Assembly: GCF_963853765.1 (NCBI RefSeq)
Contig: NC_088855.1
Coordinates: 50,902,001 to 50,966,000 of the forward strand
DNA length: 64,000 nt
Direction of reading: 5' to 3'
From: Magallana gigas
Taxonomy: Eukaryota
Shown in pieces: positions 6,825-48,527 of this stretch. Made by a program: the position numbers and the translations under genes. Under the pieces are notes generated by a model. It worked only from the letters and a program-made list of their open reading frames with translations, did not search any database and was not told the origin of the DNA. Position 1 is the first letter of the stretch, and every line of letters starts with the position of its first letter.

Positions 6825-7146
6825 TCTATATTTGGTCCTGATTTATACATCAGAAATGTTTTATTACAGAAATGGCCGGGATTTTCCAAGGTTTTCTTCT
6901 ACTCCTCCTGTTTTACAATGTAGCATCCAGATCTATATTTGGTCTTGATATAGACAATAGAAATGTTTTATTACAGAAATGGCCGGGATTTTCCAAGGTT
7001 TTCTTCTACTCCTCCTGTTTTACAATGTAGCATCCAGATCTATATTTGGTCTTGATATAGACAATAGAAATGTTTATGTTTTATTACAGAAATGGCCGGG
7101 ATTTTCCAAAGTTCTCTTCTACTCCTCCTGTTTTTCAATGTAGCAT
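6825..7146 (+). repeat. Tandem triplication (107/113-bp unit) of intron 3' end plus 5' part of the signal-peptide exon
   Basis: ttattacag|aaATGGCCGGGATTTTCCAA recurs with ATGs at 6872, 6979 and 7092. Only the third copy continues to a donor (7179/7180). Confidence 0.95.
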
Positions 7147-9997
7147 CAACATCTATCCACGTGCAGCTTATACCCTCCGGTAAGTAATTGGTCACTGCAG
7201 CCCTGTTGTTACTTAGATAAAAGATAAAAGAAGTTTGTGCCAGGTGACTAGAAAGAAATGGTCGAGTCTCTTATTGTCAAATAAATATTGCAACAGAAAC
7301 TTAAATTGGGGATACGTGCAAAGAAAATATTTAATAATTTTATTTTGTTTAAATTTGATATTCAGAATTGTTCTATTGTTTTGGATCCTTAGCAAATCAC
7401 GAAATTTAAAATTACTAGTTTAATGAAGAAAACGTTCGCTTTAAAAATTACATGTATTCTAGTTAGATGTCCCATTGGTGAATTTTCAGTTTAAAATAAG
7501 TTTTAGACGATTTGGGTCTTTTATAATTTCAGATCAAATACAAACAAAAAACCAAATTCAACCAACAATGTAATTAGTTATGAGCAAATGTAATAGATTA
7601 ATGCTACTTGAGTTTAAACTAATATCGAGTGCTTGATAAAACTTTAAGAGAATTGATCTACTTTTCCATTAAAATCCTGTAAAACTAATGATGTCATCGG
7701 AACGGATGAATTTATATTGCTTATTATGCAATGGTACTTTCATTCCAATCGCGAGCGATTGGTTACTTAAAATTAATAAATTACAGCTGAAGTTTACTGT
7801 GTACCAAGAGGTCTTTCTGACTGGTACTAGTATTTGTTGGTCTTTTGATTTTAAATATGTGAAGAAAATGCGAACGTATGTGAGCTGTTTGTCCTAGAAT
7901 AAAGTTCTTTATAAGGATGAAATTGAGTACAGTGGTAAAAAAAAGTAATTTATCAACGGCATTGGCTGGTTCAGTATATAAAATATAATGGTCTTCCAGC
8001 ATCGTTTAAAAGTCAATTATAAGAAATAGTACATTTGGATAATAATACGATACCTGTTTATTTCAAAATACCATTTAACTCATTTAGTTCCTTAAACGTA
8101 CATTTGCTCTTTAGTACACCGCCAATCTAACGATTATCAAAGACTTGTTTAAACATTTATATACCGTAGGGATAGTCAATTCTTAACTGTGTTACTTCTG
8201 TCGACAGATTCCCAAGACAATAGAGCATATTTTTGTTGACTGTTGTTAAGTGAAAGAAAGGACAGGGGCGTAAAAGGCGTTGTATATCCCTTATCGGATG
8301 AGAAGTAAATCTCAGTCGACTTTTTAAACAAAAATTCTGTGGTTTTCTAAAAAATTATGATAAGATTTAAAAAAATAAATATTTAATACGATCTAGATAC
8401 GATCTGAATAACGATCAAAAATACTTAATGTTCATGTTCTGTACACACAATGTCGCATAAAAATGGCGCTAGCACAGATATGACATTATGCTGTAATGTT
8501 TAGAAATGAACTAATAAAACAAACGAGATAAGTACAAAGTATAAATATATATTTGTTAATTTGTCAGAGAATGATGTTTTATATTATACATGTACTGATG
8601 TACACTTTCAAATGTAAATTTCTTTTTATATGTATGTATGCCATTTCAACATTCTGGATGTGGGGGATTTGTCAGGCATTTATAGATGTTAAAAAAGTCA
8701 TCCTGGATTAAATGCGACATCTTTGAAGGTTTCCCTTCGTAATAAAATGTGACGACACAACACCGAAGCAAAAAATGTCAGAATGGCGGTCTCAGTTTTT
8801 TAAATTATTACAGTAACTGATTATTCATATTCTTTCTCGGTTTTTTTTTTAATATCTTTAATGCTGATCACCAAATGGTGTTTTTCCCTAATTTTTCTAG
8901 ATACCCCGATTGCTGGAAATGATGGAATGTACCATGTAGAAGCGAAGCGGCCATTTGGCGGCGTATACGGCAGACCATTCACGATGGGGAGGCGTTCTTC
9001 GGACTTCGGAAATTCCCACCTCGCGGCAAAAAGACCTTTCGGTAGAGTATTTGGAAGATCCTATAAATTAGGAAAACGAGATTTCGTGCCTCCAGAATCC
9101 CATCATATTACGGTGAAACGCCCATTTGGAAGAATATTTGGAAACTACAGAACAAATGTCCACGCTTCCACGCAAAAACAAACAAAACGTCCTTTTGGGT
9201 CTGTATATAGAATTTCATATAGTAAACGACCCTTTGGAGGGGTTTATGGTAATTCTTACAAGATAGGCAAACGATACGTTCTACCACAGGATGAACATAA
9301 CGAGGTGAAACGACCCTTTGGTAAAGTTTATGGTCGCTCATACAAATTTGGTAAGAGACCGTTTGGCCAAGTATATGGATCAAGGTACGGAAAAAGATCG
9401 GTCGGAAGCTTCGACGATGAAGCAGCGATAATCTTGGAAAACACGTCTCCATCAGAACACAATGGGCACGAGCTACTTGTAAAACGACCTTTTGGTAAAA
9501 TTTACGGGAAAAGATATGACGTTGACAAACGCCCTTTTGGTCAAATCTACAGCCCAAGACGTCCTTTTGGTAAGCGACCCTTCCCTGGTAGCGTCGACTT
9601 CCCGATGCTGAACAAGAGACCATTCGGTAAAATGTATGGGAGATCGTATAGACTAAAGAAAAGCCCATACAAAATATACACAGATGGGAAAGGTTCATTT
9701 GTAAACATTCCAGATTCTATCGTAGATGAGCCCGATAGCCTTGTACTTCCGGGTCCATCCGACCGGATTTCGAACCAGCCTTATCCGGCTTTCTTTGAGG
9801 ATCCAGGTCAAAAAGACGTAGTTTTTGTTGAGACAGGCGGATATGACGTGGACGTACCAGGTTCTGAAGGTCAAACAGAGGATCAGGATATGGGAGAAGT
9901 ATACACAGACAGTGATGGTGCTATGGAGGAGGACGAATCAGACGATGGAAATCTAGGGATTGAAGAGGACAGTGAGGAAGACAGCGAAGAAGAATAG
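7092..9997 (+). CDS. Multi-copy neuropeptide precursor (PFG...amide peptides; resembles bivalve PFGx7/8amide-type precursors), 394 aa
   Basis: Exon 7092-7179 encodes the signal peptide MAGIFQSSLLLLLFFNVASTSIHVQLIPS and ends G|gtaagt (phase 1). It joins acceptor tttttctag|AT at 8901, in frame with the 8861-9997 ORF. There are eleven (K/R)R-PFG units, several G-KR/G-RR amidation and cleavage sites, and an acidic C-terminal tail. The family name is recalled, not searched. Confidence 0.92.
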
Positions 9998-10824
9998 TGG
10001 TTTTATTCATCCATAAGACGGATATTATACGGAAAAAAAAATTAAAACAGATGACGAAGATCAATATTTTAGATAGGTGATTGAGGAAATTAACCTGAAA
10101 TCTTTTCAAGTCTAGATCTCGTTAAAATAGTTTGCTGTCTCATTCTGTTATGTCATGAATGAAGGACATCGGTGACATCAATTAAATTAAGAAGTTTTAT
10201 TTTCTCATCCCTAACTCTTATACGGAAAACTTTTCCGTATAAGAAGTACCACTATGTCTCATATTTTCAAAAATTTTGTTTCGGCTTATTCGATCAGAAA
10301 TGAACTGTCATACTTTTCAAAATGAAATGATTTATCATTTGTATTTTAGTACAAGACTTTTAAAGTAAAATTTCTCAGAGTGTGATTTATTTTCATATGT
10401 GTTCATTTAACTGTTGTTATATTTAATCATCGATCTTCGTAATTAAATGTACTAAATATTGGATGTTGCGTTTTTAAAAGTAAAGATTTGTTACGTCTAG
10501 TTATAGCATATTAATTCTACAACGATGGTACTCTGCAAATATAGAATTAATAAATTTAAAGAACTATTATTATGAATTATCTAGAAAATATCAAAAAATG
10601 TATATTGAATTTGATATGGATTAACAACAAAAAAGCTAGTCTCTTTATATCTTAATTTAATTTTTTTTTACTTTTTTTTTCATTTAAATCTACTCTGATA
10701 TGTTACAATTTATTTTTATCTGTAACAATAGATTTAAGTAAGCACCACGTGTTCATTAGTTTCATTTTGATGAACTTTCTAGTGTGTCTGCATGTCAAGT
10801 CTATCACCTCTCCATCGTCATTAG

Positions 10825-34900: not shown

Positions 34901-37369
34901 GCCAGAAGAATGTTGAATGCAATGGATGAAAAGACTATTCCATAATGTATTTTGTACACTCCTATAGAGATGCATTTCCAAATAATTCAGGTACTTTGAC
35001 CGTGGAAGCAATTTACCAAGACAGAGACCAGTTTGCCCAGCTGGTGAGAGAGGTTGCTTCCCCTGATGTTGGTAAGATGGGGATTGAAGTTCTCAGTTTC
35101 ACCATAAAGGACATCAACGACAGAGTGGAGTACCTGTCCTCCCTGGGACGAGCCCAGACGGCCAATGTCAAGAGAGACGCAGACATTGGTGTAGCAGAGG
35201 CAAACAAGGATGCAGGAATCAGGGTTAGTTTATTAAAGAGCCCAAATCAATTTAGGTTGTAAGCTCTTTCAAATTAATTTTTAAAGGAGGAAAATAATTT
35301 ATCAGTTAATGAAATGAAATGGTTAAAGTTTGATTTACTGGTAAAAAGAAAATTGTGATGGGTTAAAGAAATAAATTTGATAGCTATAATGTTACACAAA
35401 TAATAATTGGTTTCAGAAAGTTTATACTTTTAAAATGTGAACTTTATAAAAAGGCGTAAACTGTTTTGATGTAGTGTATGTGAGTAAATATTCTTAAAGC
35501 TTTTGAAGTTGATCCTTAAAATTAAGTTTTATGGAAGAAGGTACAGATACATGTAGTAATAAAAATTAGCTTTTAAATAGGGAGAGGTTGTGCAAATAGA
35601 ATGTCATTCAGATTGATGTACTATATTTGCAAACTATTTACCTAGATTCTTTCAGCCAAGCAAATGGCTCATCAGAAATGAATTATATGTTGAATCATTG
35701 ATAACTTTTATAACAGGAAGCAGAGTGTGACAAGCAATTGATGGACACCAAGTTTACGGCTGACACAAAGATTGCAGACTCCTCCAGGCAGTACCAGATG
35801 ATGAAAGCTTCATTTGACATGGAAGTCAATGCCAAGGTGGGAACCTCAGTAATTGTAAACCTGTTGTGTTTGTAGGAAGTACCTGTAAACAGAAAAATAT
35901 TCGTCCCCATTTTATTTTCACCCCTTTGTTGTCAGCGGACAAATTTCAGACTGGAGAAATTCCAATGTCTCAAATTATATCTTTTAAAACAGAACTGTGT
36001 CTGGGTGAATTCAAGATGGGGCAAAACTGTTTGCAAGTGTAGAAGGTCTAAAATTACATGTGGCGAAAAATTACCCAGTATACATTATCATTCGGATGTT
36101 ATTAAAGTCTCAATATTGTAGAAAGCTGAGGCTGAATTGGCCTATCAGCTTCAAGCAGCCCGTGAGAGGCAGAGTATCAGGCAGGAGGAGATTGAGATTG
36201 AGGTGGTGGAGAGGAGGAAGCTCATTGATGTGGAGGAGAAGGAAATCCTCAGGAAGGAGAAGGAACTGATAGCCACTGTCAAAAGACCGGCAGAGGCGCA
36301 GGCTTACAAGGTCGAACAGCTGGCTGAAGGTCAGAGGTAAGCAACCTCTCAAATCAAAGGGATGAGGAATGTATGAACTACAGCTGTGTTTGTTGGGATA
36401 TTCAGACATCCAGTCTTATTGTTTATTGTATTTTTGTGAAATATTGCTCTGTGTTATTGTAGGGTTTGATGTAAGTAAAGTGAGTGCAGAACTTACTTTA
36501 TCACAAACATTTTAGATTCTTTAGTTTAATACATATATTTATATGAAATTAGGATTATTTGAATATTGATCAAGAAATTGCATTTTTCATCTAGTGCATA
36601 ATCATGTTTTCATAAAGATAGTGTAGGTTTTGTGATTTTTTTTGAAACAAAAGTATAAGACATGCATGTATATTTTTTTTAACATTTTTTTTTTATTCAG
36701 AATGAGTTAGTTTTGCAATGACACACACTTGCTCCAATGGTCATTTTCATTGACATGTTATAGTAAGACAGATGATTCATTGTAAATTACCATAAATAGA
36801 TTTTAAAACAATTCACACATTTTAGGAAACAAACAGTGGAGGCTGCCCATGCTGAGGCTGAGAGGATCCGTTTGATTGGTGGATCAGAGGCCGGAGCCAT
36901 CGAATGTGTGGGCAAGGCTGAAGCAGAAAAGATGAGACTGAAGGCTTCAGCTTACAAACAGTATGGAGAAGCTGCCATGTTGTCTCTGGTTCTGGAGACT
37001 TTGCCAAAGGTCAGAAGTGTATTATTCTCAATGTACATCATATTAACACAATGAAATCAGGAGCAACATGAAAGAGACCTGTACTTTCTTTTTATAGATT
37101 GCTGCTGAGGTTGCCGCTCCTCTGTCCAAGACTGATACTATAGTGATGGTCGGGGACGACAGAACCACCAGTGAAGTGAGCCGCTTAGTGAGTCAGCTAC
37201 CTCCTGCTGTCCAGGCCCTCACAGGGGTTGACCTCTCTAAGGTCAGTAACAAACTGAAGTCTTAAAACTTAAAAAAAAAAAAAAAACTGCAAATGCACCA
37301 AAATCTTGTATCATCAAATATTTATTTTATTTACAGGTTGTTGGGAAAATCCCCGGTGCCACATCCTAG
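31952..37369 (+). CDS. FLOT2: Flotillin-2 (reggie-1), 424 aa
   Basis: Exons are 31952-32000, 33990-34071, 34471-34685, 34991-35223, 35717-35836, 36122-36336, 36826-37009, 37098-37241 and 37337-37369. The N-terminus is [21 protein letters not shown]. The SPFH domain ([40 protein letters not shown]) and EA-rich flotillin coil are present. Confidence 0.96.
32647..33879. mobile_element. Composite TTAA-type (Kolobok-like) MITE(s) in FLOT2 intron 1
   Basis: ttaa|agtggtattggacacctg ... caggtgtcccataccacct|ttta, with an internal perfect 33-bp inverted repeat (32706-32738 / 33588-33620) and tRNA-like segments. Confidence 0.55.
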
Positions 37370-47500: not shown

Positions 47501-48527
47501 AATTATTACTGTACATGTATTAACTATTAATAAATATATAGTTGTTATTTACCAATCTCAATTTGTTTAAAGATACTTAGCACAAAATTTTGACTGGCTA
47601 CAAGAACAACTGGAAGAAGTTGAAGATGACTACATTATATTTGACTGTCCAGGTATATTCATTTTCACTTCATCCTATTTGCCTTAGTATTGTAGACTCT
47701 AAATGGCTTTTAACTAAACACAGTTACATGTAGCAGAAGTAAATGTCTATACATACACAGAGCTCTGCAGTGTAAATGAGTGTTTTTCGAGTAAAATCAA
47801 AAACGTCATATTCATTATTGCTATTTTTATTATTCACATCGTAGGAACCCACAGGTTTTCTCTCTGGTACAATGCTTCCACGGGTTTTCTATCCGTAACA
47901 CTGCTTTCAAGCAGTGTAACAGATAGAAAACCTGTGGGTTCCGATGATGATTATTCATGACAGCATCGCTTTGGTTGTAGGTCAGATTGAATTATACACA
48001 CATATCCCTGTGATGCGACAGCTTGTTGAAACTCTACAGAAATGGGACTTCCGAATTTGTGGTGTATTTTTAGTGGACTCTCAGTTTATGATTGAGCCAT
48101 CCAAGTTCATATCAGGAATTCTTACTGCTTTATCCACAATGGTTAACCTGGAAATCCCCCATGTGAATGTCATGACGAAAATAGATCTACTTAGTAAAAA
48201 GGCCAAAAAGGAGCTTGAAAGGTTAGGATATATTTGTTATGGTTTAGTTAAAAGTTTAAATGTAATACTTAATTAACAGAAACACACTGTCAGTCTTCCA
48301 AATATATGTACCATACTTACTGACATAAATTTTCTTTGTGGAAATAAACTTGTCTGTCCAACGTCCATGTTTGGTCCTCAAGTTTTTAAAAAGTAAAATA
48401 TATTACTGGGAAAATCTTTGATCTGAGACATTGGGGGGGGGGGTATTTCTTCTTTAGACAGCTCTAGATTGTCTTTGAAATATTCATTTTTGACCTTTAC
48501 TAAATATCTTTAATCTTTAGCCTCTCT

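What the first reader, a model, noticed from the sequence alone, without database searches (positions are those of the whole stretch)
8901..9670. Precursor encodes nested short (PFGxxY/F-amide) and long (12-mer amide) peptides
Seen: 11 PFG units after KR/RR. Dibasic cleavage alone gives PFGGVYGRPFTMa, PFGRVFGRSYKLa, PFGGVYGNSYKIa, PFGKVYGRSYKFa, PFGQVYGSRYa and PFGKIYa. Four units have an internal G-R that, if cut monobasically, would give amidated hexapeptides PFGGVYa, PFGRVFa, PFGKVYa and PFGKMYa plus SYK(L/F)a tetrapeptides. One unit (PFGKIY-GKR) encodes the hexapeptide form directly, and others replace the R (GN, GS) and block it. KRPFG codons are synonymously scrambled between copies (e.g. 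aagcggccatttggc, aaaagacctttcggt, aaacgtccttttggg), indicating long-term protein-level selection. Established: KR-Pro processing occurs in molluscs (myomodulin PMSMLRLamide). Inference: a cell-type-dependent two-tier peptide code. I know of no deorphanised receptor for this family.
Basis: partly seen in the sequence, partly recalled or inferred. Interest (0 to 1): 0.7.

Follow-up and report, generated by a model that had tools for sequence, protein, structure and literature searches.

The report
Known oyster PFGx8amide neuropeptide precursor gene

Summary
Window 8901-9997 (+) is exon 2 of a two-exon gene; exon 1 (7092-7179) carries the signal peptide. The GT..AG splice 7179^8901 is present in an RNA contig.

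The exon encodes 11 KR/RR-PFG motifs plus one PFP unit.

The gene is not new. It is the Crassostrea gigas PFGx8amide precursor (EST CU986338) of Stewart et al. 2014 (PMC4200219). Their supplement predicts 10 of its 11 peptides exactly as the window encodes them. Relatives are reported in Pinctada and Lottia, and in scallop as PFVx7amide.

The nested two-tier idea is unsupported:
- Mass spectrometry of oyster visceral ganglia found PFGGVYGRPFTMamide intact, with its Gly-Arg uncut. No hexapeptide was listed, although the 600-4000 Da sieve would have admitted them.
- None of the four internal Gly-Arg sites has a basic residue at P4, P6 or P8.
- The Gly at position 7 is kept whatever follows it.
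- The basic residue at position 8 swaps Arg for Lys among oysters and is mostly absent in the non-oyster relatives examined.

Verdict: already known, ordinary, low interest.

The parts
7092..7179 (+). Exon 1: start codon and signal peptide (MAGIFQSSLLLLLFFNVASTSIHVQLIPS plus the first base of an Asp codon), with donor CCG|GTAAGT
   Evidence: It matches the N-terminus of the published C. gigas precursor and of the Saccostrea homologue P0005. RNA contig X3 joins 7179 to 8901.
7180..8900 (+). Phase-1 intron of 1721 bases, GT..AG
   Evidence: table 5: the joint skips 1721 bases with GT..AG ends, in one 1372-nt contig of depth 92. One search shows the splice-site sequences.
8901..9997 (+). Exon 2 coding part: all the peptide copies, the spacers, an acidic C-terminal tail and the TAG stop (9995-9997)
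   Evidence: Homologues P0001-P0009. RNA contigs cover 8900-10187.
8945..9655 (+). Peptide-repeat region: 10 PFG peptides and 1 PFP peptide flanked by KR/RR/KK. Seven carry a C-terminal Gly amide donor (eight if PFGQIYSPRRPF-G is counted uncut).
   Evidence: unit table. The same peptide list is in Additional file 1 of PMC4200219.
8951..8989 (+). Unit 1, PFGGVYGRPFTM-G: detected intact and amidated in oyster visceral ganglia
   Evidence: Additional file 3 of PMC4200219: Cg-PFGx8amide 1327.59, R.PFGGVYGRPFTM.G, amidated.
9191..9223 (+). Unit 4, PFGSVYRISYS (not amidated): detected intact, its internal Arg uncut
   Evidence: Additional file 3 of PMC4200219: Cg-PFGx8amide 1275.62, R.PFGSVYRISYS.K.
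9488..9508 (+). Unit 8, PFGKIY-G (followed by KR): hexapeptide amide encoded directly, a derived shortened unit
   Evidence: It aligns with a 6-column gap to 12-residue units of Saccostrea P0005 and P0006. It is kept as PFGK[IM]YGKR in P0001-P0004.
9656..9994 (+). C-terminal spacer and acidic tail (ends EEDSEEDSEEE), with no dibasic-flanked peptides
   Evidence: Conserved in P0001-P0004. The published EST-derived sequence is frameshifted here.
9998..10187 (+). At least 190 bases of 3' untranslated region; the end is not mapped
   Evidence: the X3 contig runs to 10187. One search gives the sequence. No poly(A) site was determined.

Best explanation
The finding is exon 2 of the Pacific oyster (Crassostrea/Magallana gigas or a very close relative) gene for the PFGx8amide neuropeptide precursor.

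The 394-residue prepropeptide has a signal peptide from exon 1. It then carries a run of peptide copies, each starting Pro-Phe-Gly directly after a Lys-Arg pair, and an acidic tail.

The processing steps are inferred from general neuropeptide biochemistry, and the end products are confirmed by spectrometry for two peptides:
- Prohormone convertases cut after the dibasic pairs, including before Pro.
- A carboxypeptidase trims the basic residues.
- A C-terminal Gly, where present, is converted to an amide.

The main products are 10- to 12-residue peptides of the pattern PFGxxYGxSYKx-amide, plus one directly encoded hexapeptide, PFGKIYamide, and a few non-amidated peptides.

The internal Gly-Arg in four units is best read as part of the peptide: a conserved Gly at position 7 followed by an often basic position 8. 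It is not a processing site. The receptor and the physiological role are unknown.
For: Identity:
- Stewart et al. 2014 (PMC4200219) named PFGx8amide as a new family.
- Their Additional file 4 gives the C. gigas precursor from EST CU986338. By eye it matches the window model over the whole repeat region except for a few substitutions.
- Their Additional file 1 predicts 11 peptides. Ten are encoded identically in the window, and the eleventh differs in its last residue (SYRQ versus SYRL).

Gene model and expression:
- The phases of donor and acceptor match.
- A 1372-nt contig of run X3 shows the joint 7179^8901, and contigs of X1 and X5 cover exon 2.

Family: there are homologues in other oysters, Saccostrea and Pinctada, in Lottia and in scallop as PFVx7amide.

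Processing: spectrometry of visceral ganglia found PFGGVYGRPFTMamide and PFGSVYRISYS, both starting right after KR and both with an internal Arg uncut.

Selection: synonymous sites are saturated between copies while KRPFG is invariant.
Against: - Only 2 of the 11 predicted peptides were seen by spectrometry, so the products of the other units rest on prediction.
- The G-R of the one unit seen intact is followed by Pro, which may itself hinder cleavage. It therefore says little about the three G-R|Ser units.
- The organism names in the run search were coded. The species call rests on the near identity to the published C. gigas EST protein, and a sister taxon such as C. angulata is not excluded.
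Confidence: 0.88

Rival explanations
1. Nested two-tier processing. In some cells a convertase also cuts after the single Arg of the internal Gly-Arg. This would turn four 12-mers into amidated hexapeptides (PFGGVYa, PFGRVFa, PFGKVYa, PFGKMYa) plus short C-terminal fragments, so one gene would give two length classes with different targets.
For: - Four units do carry G-R at the same position.
- A hexapeptide amide of the same pattern is encoded directly (PFGKIY-GKR) and is kept in four oyster sequences.
- A basic residue at position 8 is retained in the orthologous units of several oysters.
- From my own knowledge, not tested here: amidated peptides made by a cut at Gly-Arg inside a longer peptide are known elsewhere, for example adrenorphin/metorphamide from proenkephalin.
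Against: - PFGGVYGRPFTMamide was found intact in ganglia. No PFG hexapeptide was listed, although the 600-4000 Da sieve would have let them through.
- All four sites read P2 Gly, P3 Tyr/Phe, P4 Val/Met, P6 Gly and P8 Pro. None has the basic residue at P4, P6 or P8 that monobasic sites usually need (for the contexts; the rule is from my own knowledge: Devi 1991, Veenstra 2000).
- NeuroPred as used by Stewart et al. kept the 12-mers whole.
- Arg is replaced by Lys in orthologous units of P0003, Saccostrea and P0006. Single Lys is a poor cleavage site (my own knowledge).
- Gly at position 7 is equally conserved before N, S, Q, T, A, D and G.
- Position 8 is not basic in any of the eight Lottia units, nor in P0008 and P0009, and it is basic in only 2 of the PFG units of Pinctada P0007.
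- The hexapeptide unit arose by an internal deletion of a 12-mer unit.
Confidence: 0.1
2. PFGx8amide is not a separate mollusc family but a diverged, amidated branch of the pedal peptide/orcokinin-type precursors. These are multi-copy KR-flanked peptides such as PFDSISGSHGLSGFA.
For: - Both are long tandem arrays of KR-flanked peptides starting P-F-x-S-I/V and carrying internal Gly residues.
- Stewart et al. list the Lymnaea pedal peptide precursor AAP57098.1 under the PFGx8amide heading in their sequence files.
- Their BLAST clustering places PFGx8amide in the central cluster that also holds pedal peptide.
Against: - Pedal peptides are about 15 residues long and not amidated.
- Oysters keep three separate pedal peptide genes besides this one.
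- Pfam gave no hit.
- No statistical comparison was run here, because no pedal peptide precursor was available by reference.
Confidence: 0.15
3. The protein is not a neuropeptide precursor but some other secreted repeat protein, such as a structural, adhesive or antimicrobial peptide array.
For: None specific. The tissue of the RNA runs used here is not known.
Against: - Two of its peptides were recovered from visceral ganglia extracts, one of them amidated.
- The layout is typical of neuropeptide precursors: signal peptide, dibasic flanks, Gly amide donors and an acidic spacer.
Confidence: 0.02

Closest known systems
Cg-PFGx8amide precursor, Crassostrea gigas EST CU986338 (Stewart et al. 2014, BMC Genomics 15:840, PMC4200219)
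   Same: It is the same gene. The signal peptide, the order of units and 10 of the 11 predicted peptides are identical. Two of its peptides were confirmed by spectrometry.
   Different: - There are a few substitutions: G7S, Y15F, M33I, T72A, one extra His, K to T, QKLF to HELL, and SYRQ to SYRL.
- The published sequence ends in a shifted frame (...QQRIRIWEKYTQT), which is the other-frame ORF at 9825-9956. The genome, the RNA contig and the homologues instead give an acidic tail ending EEDSEEDSEEE.
Pf-PFGx8amide (Pinctada fucata) and the Lottia gigantea homologue ESO91628.1
   Same: KR-PFG start, 12-residue units with a C-terminal Gly-KR, and the pattern PFGxx[YF]Gxx[YF]xx-amide.
   Different: - Position 8 is mostly not basic (D, P, S, N, G), so there is no internal G-R.
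- The full Pinctada protein P0007 also carries a second block of PFV/PFT-type units that the oyster gene lacks.
Scallop PFVx7amide precursor (Patinopecten yessoensis; Zhang et al. 2018, PMC5996578)
   Same: The authors regard it as the scallop counterpart. It holds multi-copy KR-PF units ending in Gly-KR.
   Different: The units are 10-mers of the type PFVLGGGYKFamide. They resemble the second half of the Pinctada precursor rather than the oyster units.
Pedal peptide / orcokinin-type precursors of molluscs
   Same: Long arrays of KR-flanked peptides beginning PF-x-S-I/V.
   Different: They are not amidated, are about 15 residues long, and are encoded by separate genes in oysters. Homology was not shown here.
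Adrenorphin (metorphamide) from proenkephalin A, as a working analogy for the nested idea (from my own knowledge, not tested here)
   Same: An amidated short peptide is made by a cut at a single Arg after Gly inside a longer opioid peptide.
   Different: That site has Arg at P4 (the RxxR type). The oyster sites have Val or Met at P4 and no basic residue at P4, P6 or P8.

Membership tests
PFGx8amide neuropeptide precursors (Stewart et al. 2014) | Near identity to the type member, C. gigas EST CU986338 | tested here: met
   The window model was compared by eye with the sequence printed in Additional file 4. The unit order is the same, 10 of 11 predicted peptides are identical, and there are a few substitutions. 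No program alignment was run, because the EST protein has no reference id.
PFGx8amide neuropeptide precursors (Stewart et al. 2014) | Multiple peptide copies starting Pro-Phe-Gly directly after a dibasic site | tested here: met
   11 [KR]R-PFG motifs, against at most 1 in 20,000 shuffles.
PFGx8amide neuropeptide precursors (Stewart et al. 2014) | Units of about 11-12 residues ending in Gly plus a dibasic site (amide donor) | tested here: met
   Four 12-mers, one 10-mer and one 6-mer end in G-KR/RR, and PFGQIYSPRRPF-G-KR does as well. Four units have no Gly donor.
PFGx8amide neuropeptide precursors (Stewart et al. 2014) | N-terminal signal peptide | tested here: inconclusive
   Exon 1 encodes a hydrophobic N-terminus (LLLLLFF), is spliced in frame and matches the published N-terminus. 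No signal-peptide predictor was available.
PFGx8amide neuropeptide precursors (Stewart et al. 2014) | Mature peptides present in nervous tissue | not testable with these tools
   Taken from the literature: two peptides were found in C. gigas visceral ganglia by LC-MS/MS. The tissue of the RNA runs used here is unknown.
Pedal peptide / orcokinin-type precursors | Non-amidated peptides of about 15 residues, of the type PFDSISGSxGxSGFx | tested here: not met
   The units here are 6-12 residues, most carry a Gly amide donor, and none has the DSI or GF-end motif.
Precursors with nested peptides made by monobasic cleavage | An internal single Arg with a basic residue at P4, P6 or P8, and recovery of both the short and the long form | tested here: not met
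   P4 is V/M, P6 is G and P8 is P at all four sites. Published spectrometry lists only long forms. The context rule itself is from my own knowledge.

The most novel reading that the evidence does not exclude
In a subset of oyster neurons the three G-R|Ser units (PFGRVFGRSYKL, PFGKVYGRSYKF, PFGKMYGRSYRL) are cut after the single Arg. This would give PFGxxY/F-amide hexapeptides that join the directly encoded PFGKIYamide as a second ligand class, with its own receptor or potency. It would be an oyster-lineage innovation layered on an older 12-mer family.
Probability: 0.08. Interest if true: 0.4.

Novelty: already known. Interest (0 to 1): 0.12.

Why it matters
As it stands this is a re-discovery. 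The gene, the family name, the peptide list and partial spectrometric proof were published in 2014.

What remains open is what the family does:
- No receptor and no physiological role turned up in the literature held here, for a peptide family present in bivalves and at least one gastropod.
- Small gains from this check are a genome-anchored two-exon model, a corrected C-terminus for the published precursor, and a comparative argument that the internal Gly-Arg is part of the ligand rather than a cut site.
- If the nested processing were real, it would be a modest example of lineage-specific diversification of a neuropeptide gene. It would not be a new principle.

Tried and rejected
- Pfam scan of exon 2: only two sub-threshold chance hits.
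- Full-text searches for the peptide strings found nothing relevant in main texts. The first was swamped by the bacterial gene name RpfG. The sequences sit only in supplements.
- I looked for later oyster peptidomics. Réalis-Doyelle et al. 2021 (PMC8398477) has no PFG string in the main text or in the two held supplements. The 2025 Saccostrea paper has none either.
- The NeuroPred paper is not held. A general paper gave only a generic statement on monobasic sites. The P4/P6/P8 rule is therefore cited from my own knowledge.
- The raw-read RNA run X20 gave only a handful of reads on exon 2, too few to say anything on ends or level.
- A scan of the whole window for a second KRPF-rich frame found no tandem paralogue.
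- The large representative protein search, structure prediction and further word searches were not run.
- The joined two-exon protein was built only inside a script for translation.

Full report
**What is in the sequence**

Window 8861-9997 (+) is one long open frame. A polypyrimidine tract and an AG end at 8900, so the coding exon starts at 8901.

From 8945 to 9655 the frame holds 11 [KR]R-Pro-Phe-Gly motifs and one KR-Pro-Phe-Pro unit. The units read:
- PFGGVYGRPFTM-G-RR
- PFGRVFGRSYKL-G-KR
- PFGRIFGNYRTNVHASTQKQT-KR
- PFGSVYRISYS-KR
- PFGGVYGNSYKI-G-KR
- PFGKVYGRSYKF-G-KR
- PFGQVYGSRY-G-KR
- PFGKIY-G-KR
- PFGQIYSP-RR-PF-G-KR
- PFPGSVDFPMLN-KR
- PFGKMYGRSYRL-KK

The motif count is far beyond chance: 11 observed, against at most 1 in any of 20,000 residue shuffles.

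All 11 KRPFG stretches differ at the DNA level. Between units, 62.5% of identical residues use different codons, against 59.7% expected if codons were drawn at random from the exon's own usage. Tandem Repeats Finder does not see the array at the DNA level at all.

**Gene model**

The Saccostrea homologue P0005 starts MAGILQVFLLFLFYN. A matching start, MAGIFQSSLLLLLFFNVASTSIHVQLIPS, lies at 7092-7179 and is followed by GTAAGT.

Donor and acceptor are both phase 1. Joining them gives a 394-residue protein with no stop.

A 1372-nt contig of run X3 (depth 92) carries exactly this joint: it skips 1721 bases with GT..AG ends and runs on to 10187. Contigs of runs X1 and X5 cover exon 2. The gene is thus spliced as modelled and present in RNA-type assemblies. 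The tissue is not known, and the few raw reads of X20 add little.

The joined protein was built only in a script.

**What it is**

Pfam has no family for it. The word search found nine relatives: unnamed oyster-like sequences at 97, 87, 85 and 48% identity, an 'uncharacterized protein' of Saccostrea echinata, a hypothetical protein of Pinctada imbricata, and three other unnamed sequences.

A literature search on PFG plus oyster neuropeptides led to Stewart et al. 2014 (PMC4200219). That paper names 'PFGx8amide' as one of three new neuropeptide families of Pinctada fucata and Crassostrea gigas.
- Their Additional file 4 prints the C. gigas precursor from EST CU986338. It starts MAGIFQGSLLLLLFYNVASTSIHVQLIPSDTPMAGNDGMYHVEAKRPFGGVYGRPFTMGRR and follows the window model unit for unit, with a handful of substitutions.
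- Their Additional file 1 predicts PFGGVYGRPFTMa, PFGSVYRISYS, PFGKVYGRSYKFa, PFGRVFGRSYKLa, PFGRIFGNY, PFGGVYGNSYKIa, PFGQVYGSRYa, PFGKIYa, PFGQIYSPRRPFa, PFPGSVDFPMLN and PFGKMYGRSYRQ. The window encodes all of these; only the last differs, by one residue (SYRL).
- Their Additional file 3 reports two of them from visceral ganglia by LC-MS/MS: PFGSVYRISYS, and PFGGVYGRPFTM with an amidated C-terminus.

So the finding is the published Cg-PFGx8amide gene, in the Pacific oyster or a very close relative.

The family also has a Lottia gigantea member with units such as PFGRMFGDSFNT-GKR. Its authors equate a scallop precursor, 'PFVx7amide', with it. Only three relevant papers in the held library use the family name. 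None reports a receptor or a function.

**The nested two-tier idea**

Six lines of evidence speak against it.

1. *Spectrometry.* The one G-R unit seen by spectrometry, PFGGVYGRPFTMamide, was intact, and PFGSVYRISYS kept its internal Arg too. The mass sieve was 600-4000 Da, so hexapeptides of about 650-740 Da were not excluded, yet none is listed. This is weak negative evidence: only 2 of 11 peptides were seen at all, and unit 1 has Pro after the Arg.
2. *Site context.* All four sites read P1 Arg, P2 Gly, P3 Tyr/Phe, P4 Val/Met, P5 Gly/Arg/Lys, P6 Gly, P7 Phe and P8 Pro. From my own knowledge (Devi 1991; Veenstra 2000), monobasic sites that are used normally have a basic residue at P4, P6 or P8, and none does here. 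NeuroPred as applied by Stewart et al. also left these units whole.
3. *Gly at position 7.* In the oyster alignment it is kept in nearly all units, whether the next residue is R, K, N, S, Q, T or A. It is also common before D and G in the more distant relatives. It therefore belongs to the peptide motif and is not there as an amide donor.
4. *Position 8.* It is basic in about half of the oyster units, but Arg and Lys interchange in orthologous units:
   - unit 1: R, R, R, K, R
   - unit 6: R five times, then K, K
   - last unit: R, R, R, K, R, K, T
   
   It is basic in only 2 of the PFG units of Pinctada P0007, and in none of the units of P0008, P0009 or Lottia. A positive charge, not a cleavage site, fits this best.
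5. *The hexapeptide unit.* PFGKIY-GKR aligns with a six-column gap to 12-residue units of Saccostrea and P0006. It is a derived shortened unit of the Crassostrea-side lineage, not an ancestral short form.
6. *The 'RRPFGKR' unit.* This is the tail of an 11-12-mer, PFGQIYS..RPFamide, which has a single Arg in P0004 and Saccostrea.

The idea is chemically possible and cannot be excluded for the three G-R|Ser units. I put it at about one in ten.

**Mechanism**

Shown:
- The gene structure and the splice.
- The peptide array and protein-level selection.
- Cleavage at KR|Pro and amidation, for the two detected peptides (from the literature).

Inferred from general neuropeptide biochemistry:
- Signal peptide removal.
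- Convertase cuts at all dibasic pairs.
- Carboxypeptidase trimming.
- Amidation of every Gly-ended unit.
- Release as neuromodulators or hormones.

Unknown: the receptor, the target tissues and the role.

**Comparison and novelty**

It is a member, in fact the type member, of PFGx8amide. A relation to pedal peptide-type precursors is suggested by the shared KR-PF-x-S-I/V start and by the way Stewart et al. file a Lymnaea pedal peptide precursor under this heading. The peptides differ in length and amidation, and I ran no statistical test.

The verdict is 'already known'.

The small additions from this check are:
- a genome-anchored exon model;
- the observation that the published EST-derived protein is frameshifted near its 3' end: its last residues, QQRIRIWEKYTQT, are the other-frame ORF at 9825-9956, whereas the genome, the RNA contig and the homologues give an acidic tail;
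- the comparative case against the nested reading.

I confirmed the triplication but did not study it further.

Noticed in passing
window 6825-7156: The module holding an acceptor-like tract, the ATG and the signal-peptide start is tandemly triplicated (period 107, 92% match). Only the third copy (ATG at 7092) runs into the GTAAGT donor at 7180. Copies 1 and 2 (ATG at 6872 and 6979) read into the next repeat and stop. The RNA contig starts at 7094, so it does not say whether the upstream copies are transcribed. Already flagged by the scan as s1-399323.
   Followed up: partly
window 9825-9997: The published EST-derived Cg-PFGx8amide protein ends in the other reading frame (...QQRIRIWEKYTQT). 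This is probably a single-pass EST frameshift. The genome frame continues into an acidic tail ending EEDSEEDSEEE, which is conserved in four oyster homologues and present in the X3 RNA contig.
   Followed up: partly
window 8206-8735 (intron): Short stretches of the intron attract pieces of unrelated RNA contigs and reads that continue into unlike sequence. They look like dispersed repeat fragments rather than exons.
   Followed up: no
window 34930-35259 (+): This open stretch matches the end of the SPFH/Band 7 domain (Pfam PF01145, E 1.2e-10). It is probably an exon of a flotillin-like gene.
   Followed up: no
window 47920-48273 (+): This open stretch matches Pfam ATP_bind_1 (PF03029, E 3.8e-26). 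It is probably an exon of a GPN-loop GTPase gene.
   Followed up: no
P0007 (Pinctada imbricata, 519 aa) and P0008: The full-length pearl-oyster-type precursors carry a first block of PFGx8amide units, an acidic spacer and a second block of PFV/PFT-type units (PFVLGGFHM-G, PFTLGGGPFSL-G). The second block resembles the scallop PFVx7amide peptides. The true oyster gene has lost or never had it, so PFGx8amide and PFVx7amide may be two halves of one ancestral precursor.
   Followed up: partly
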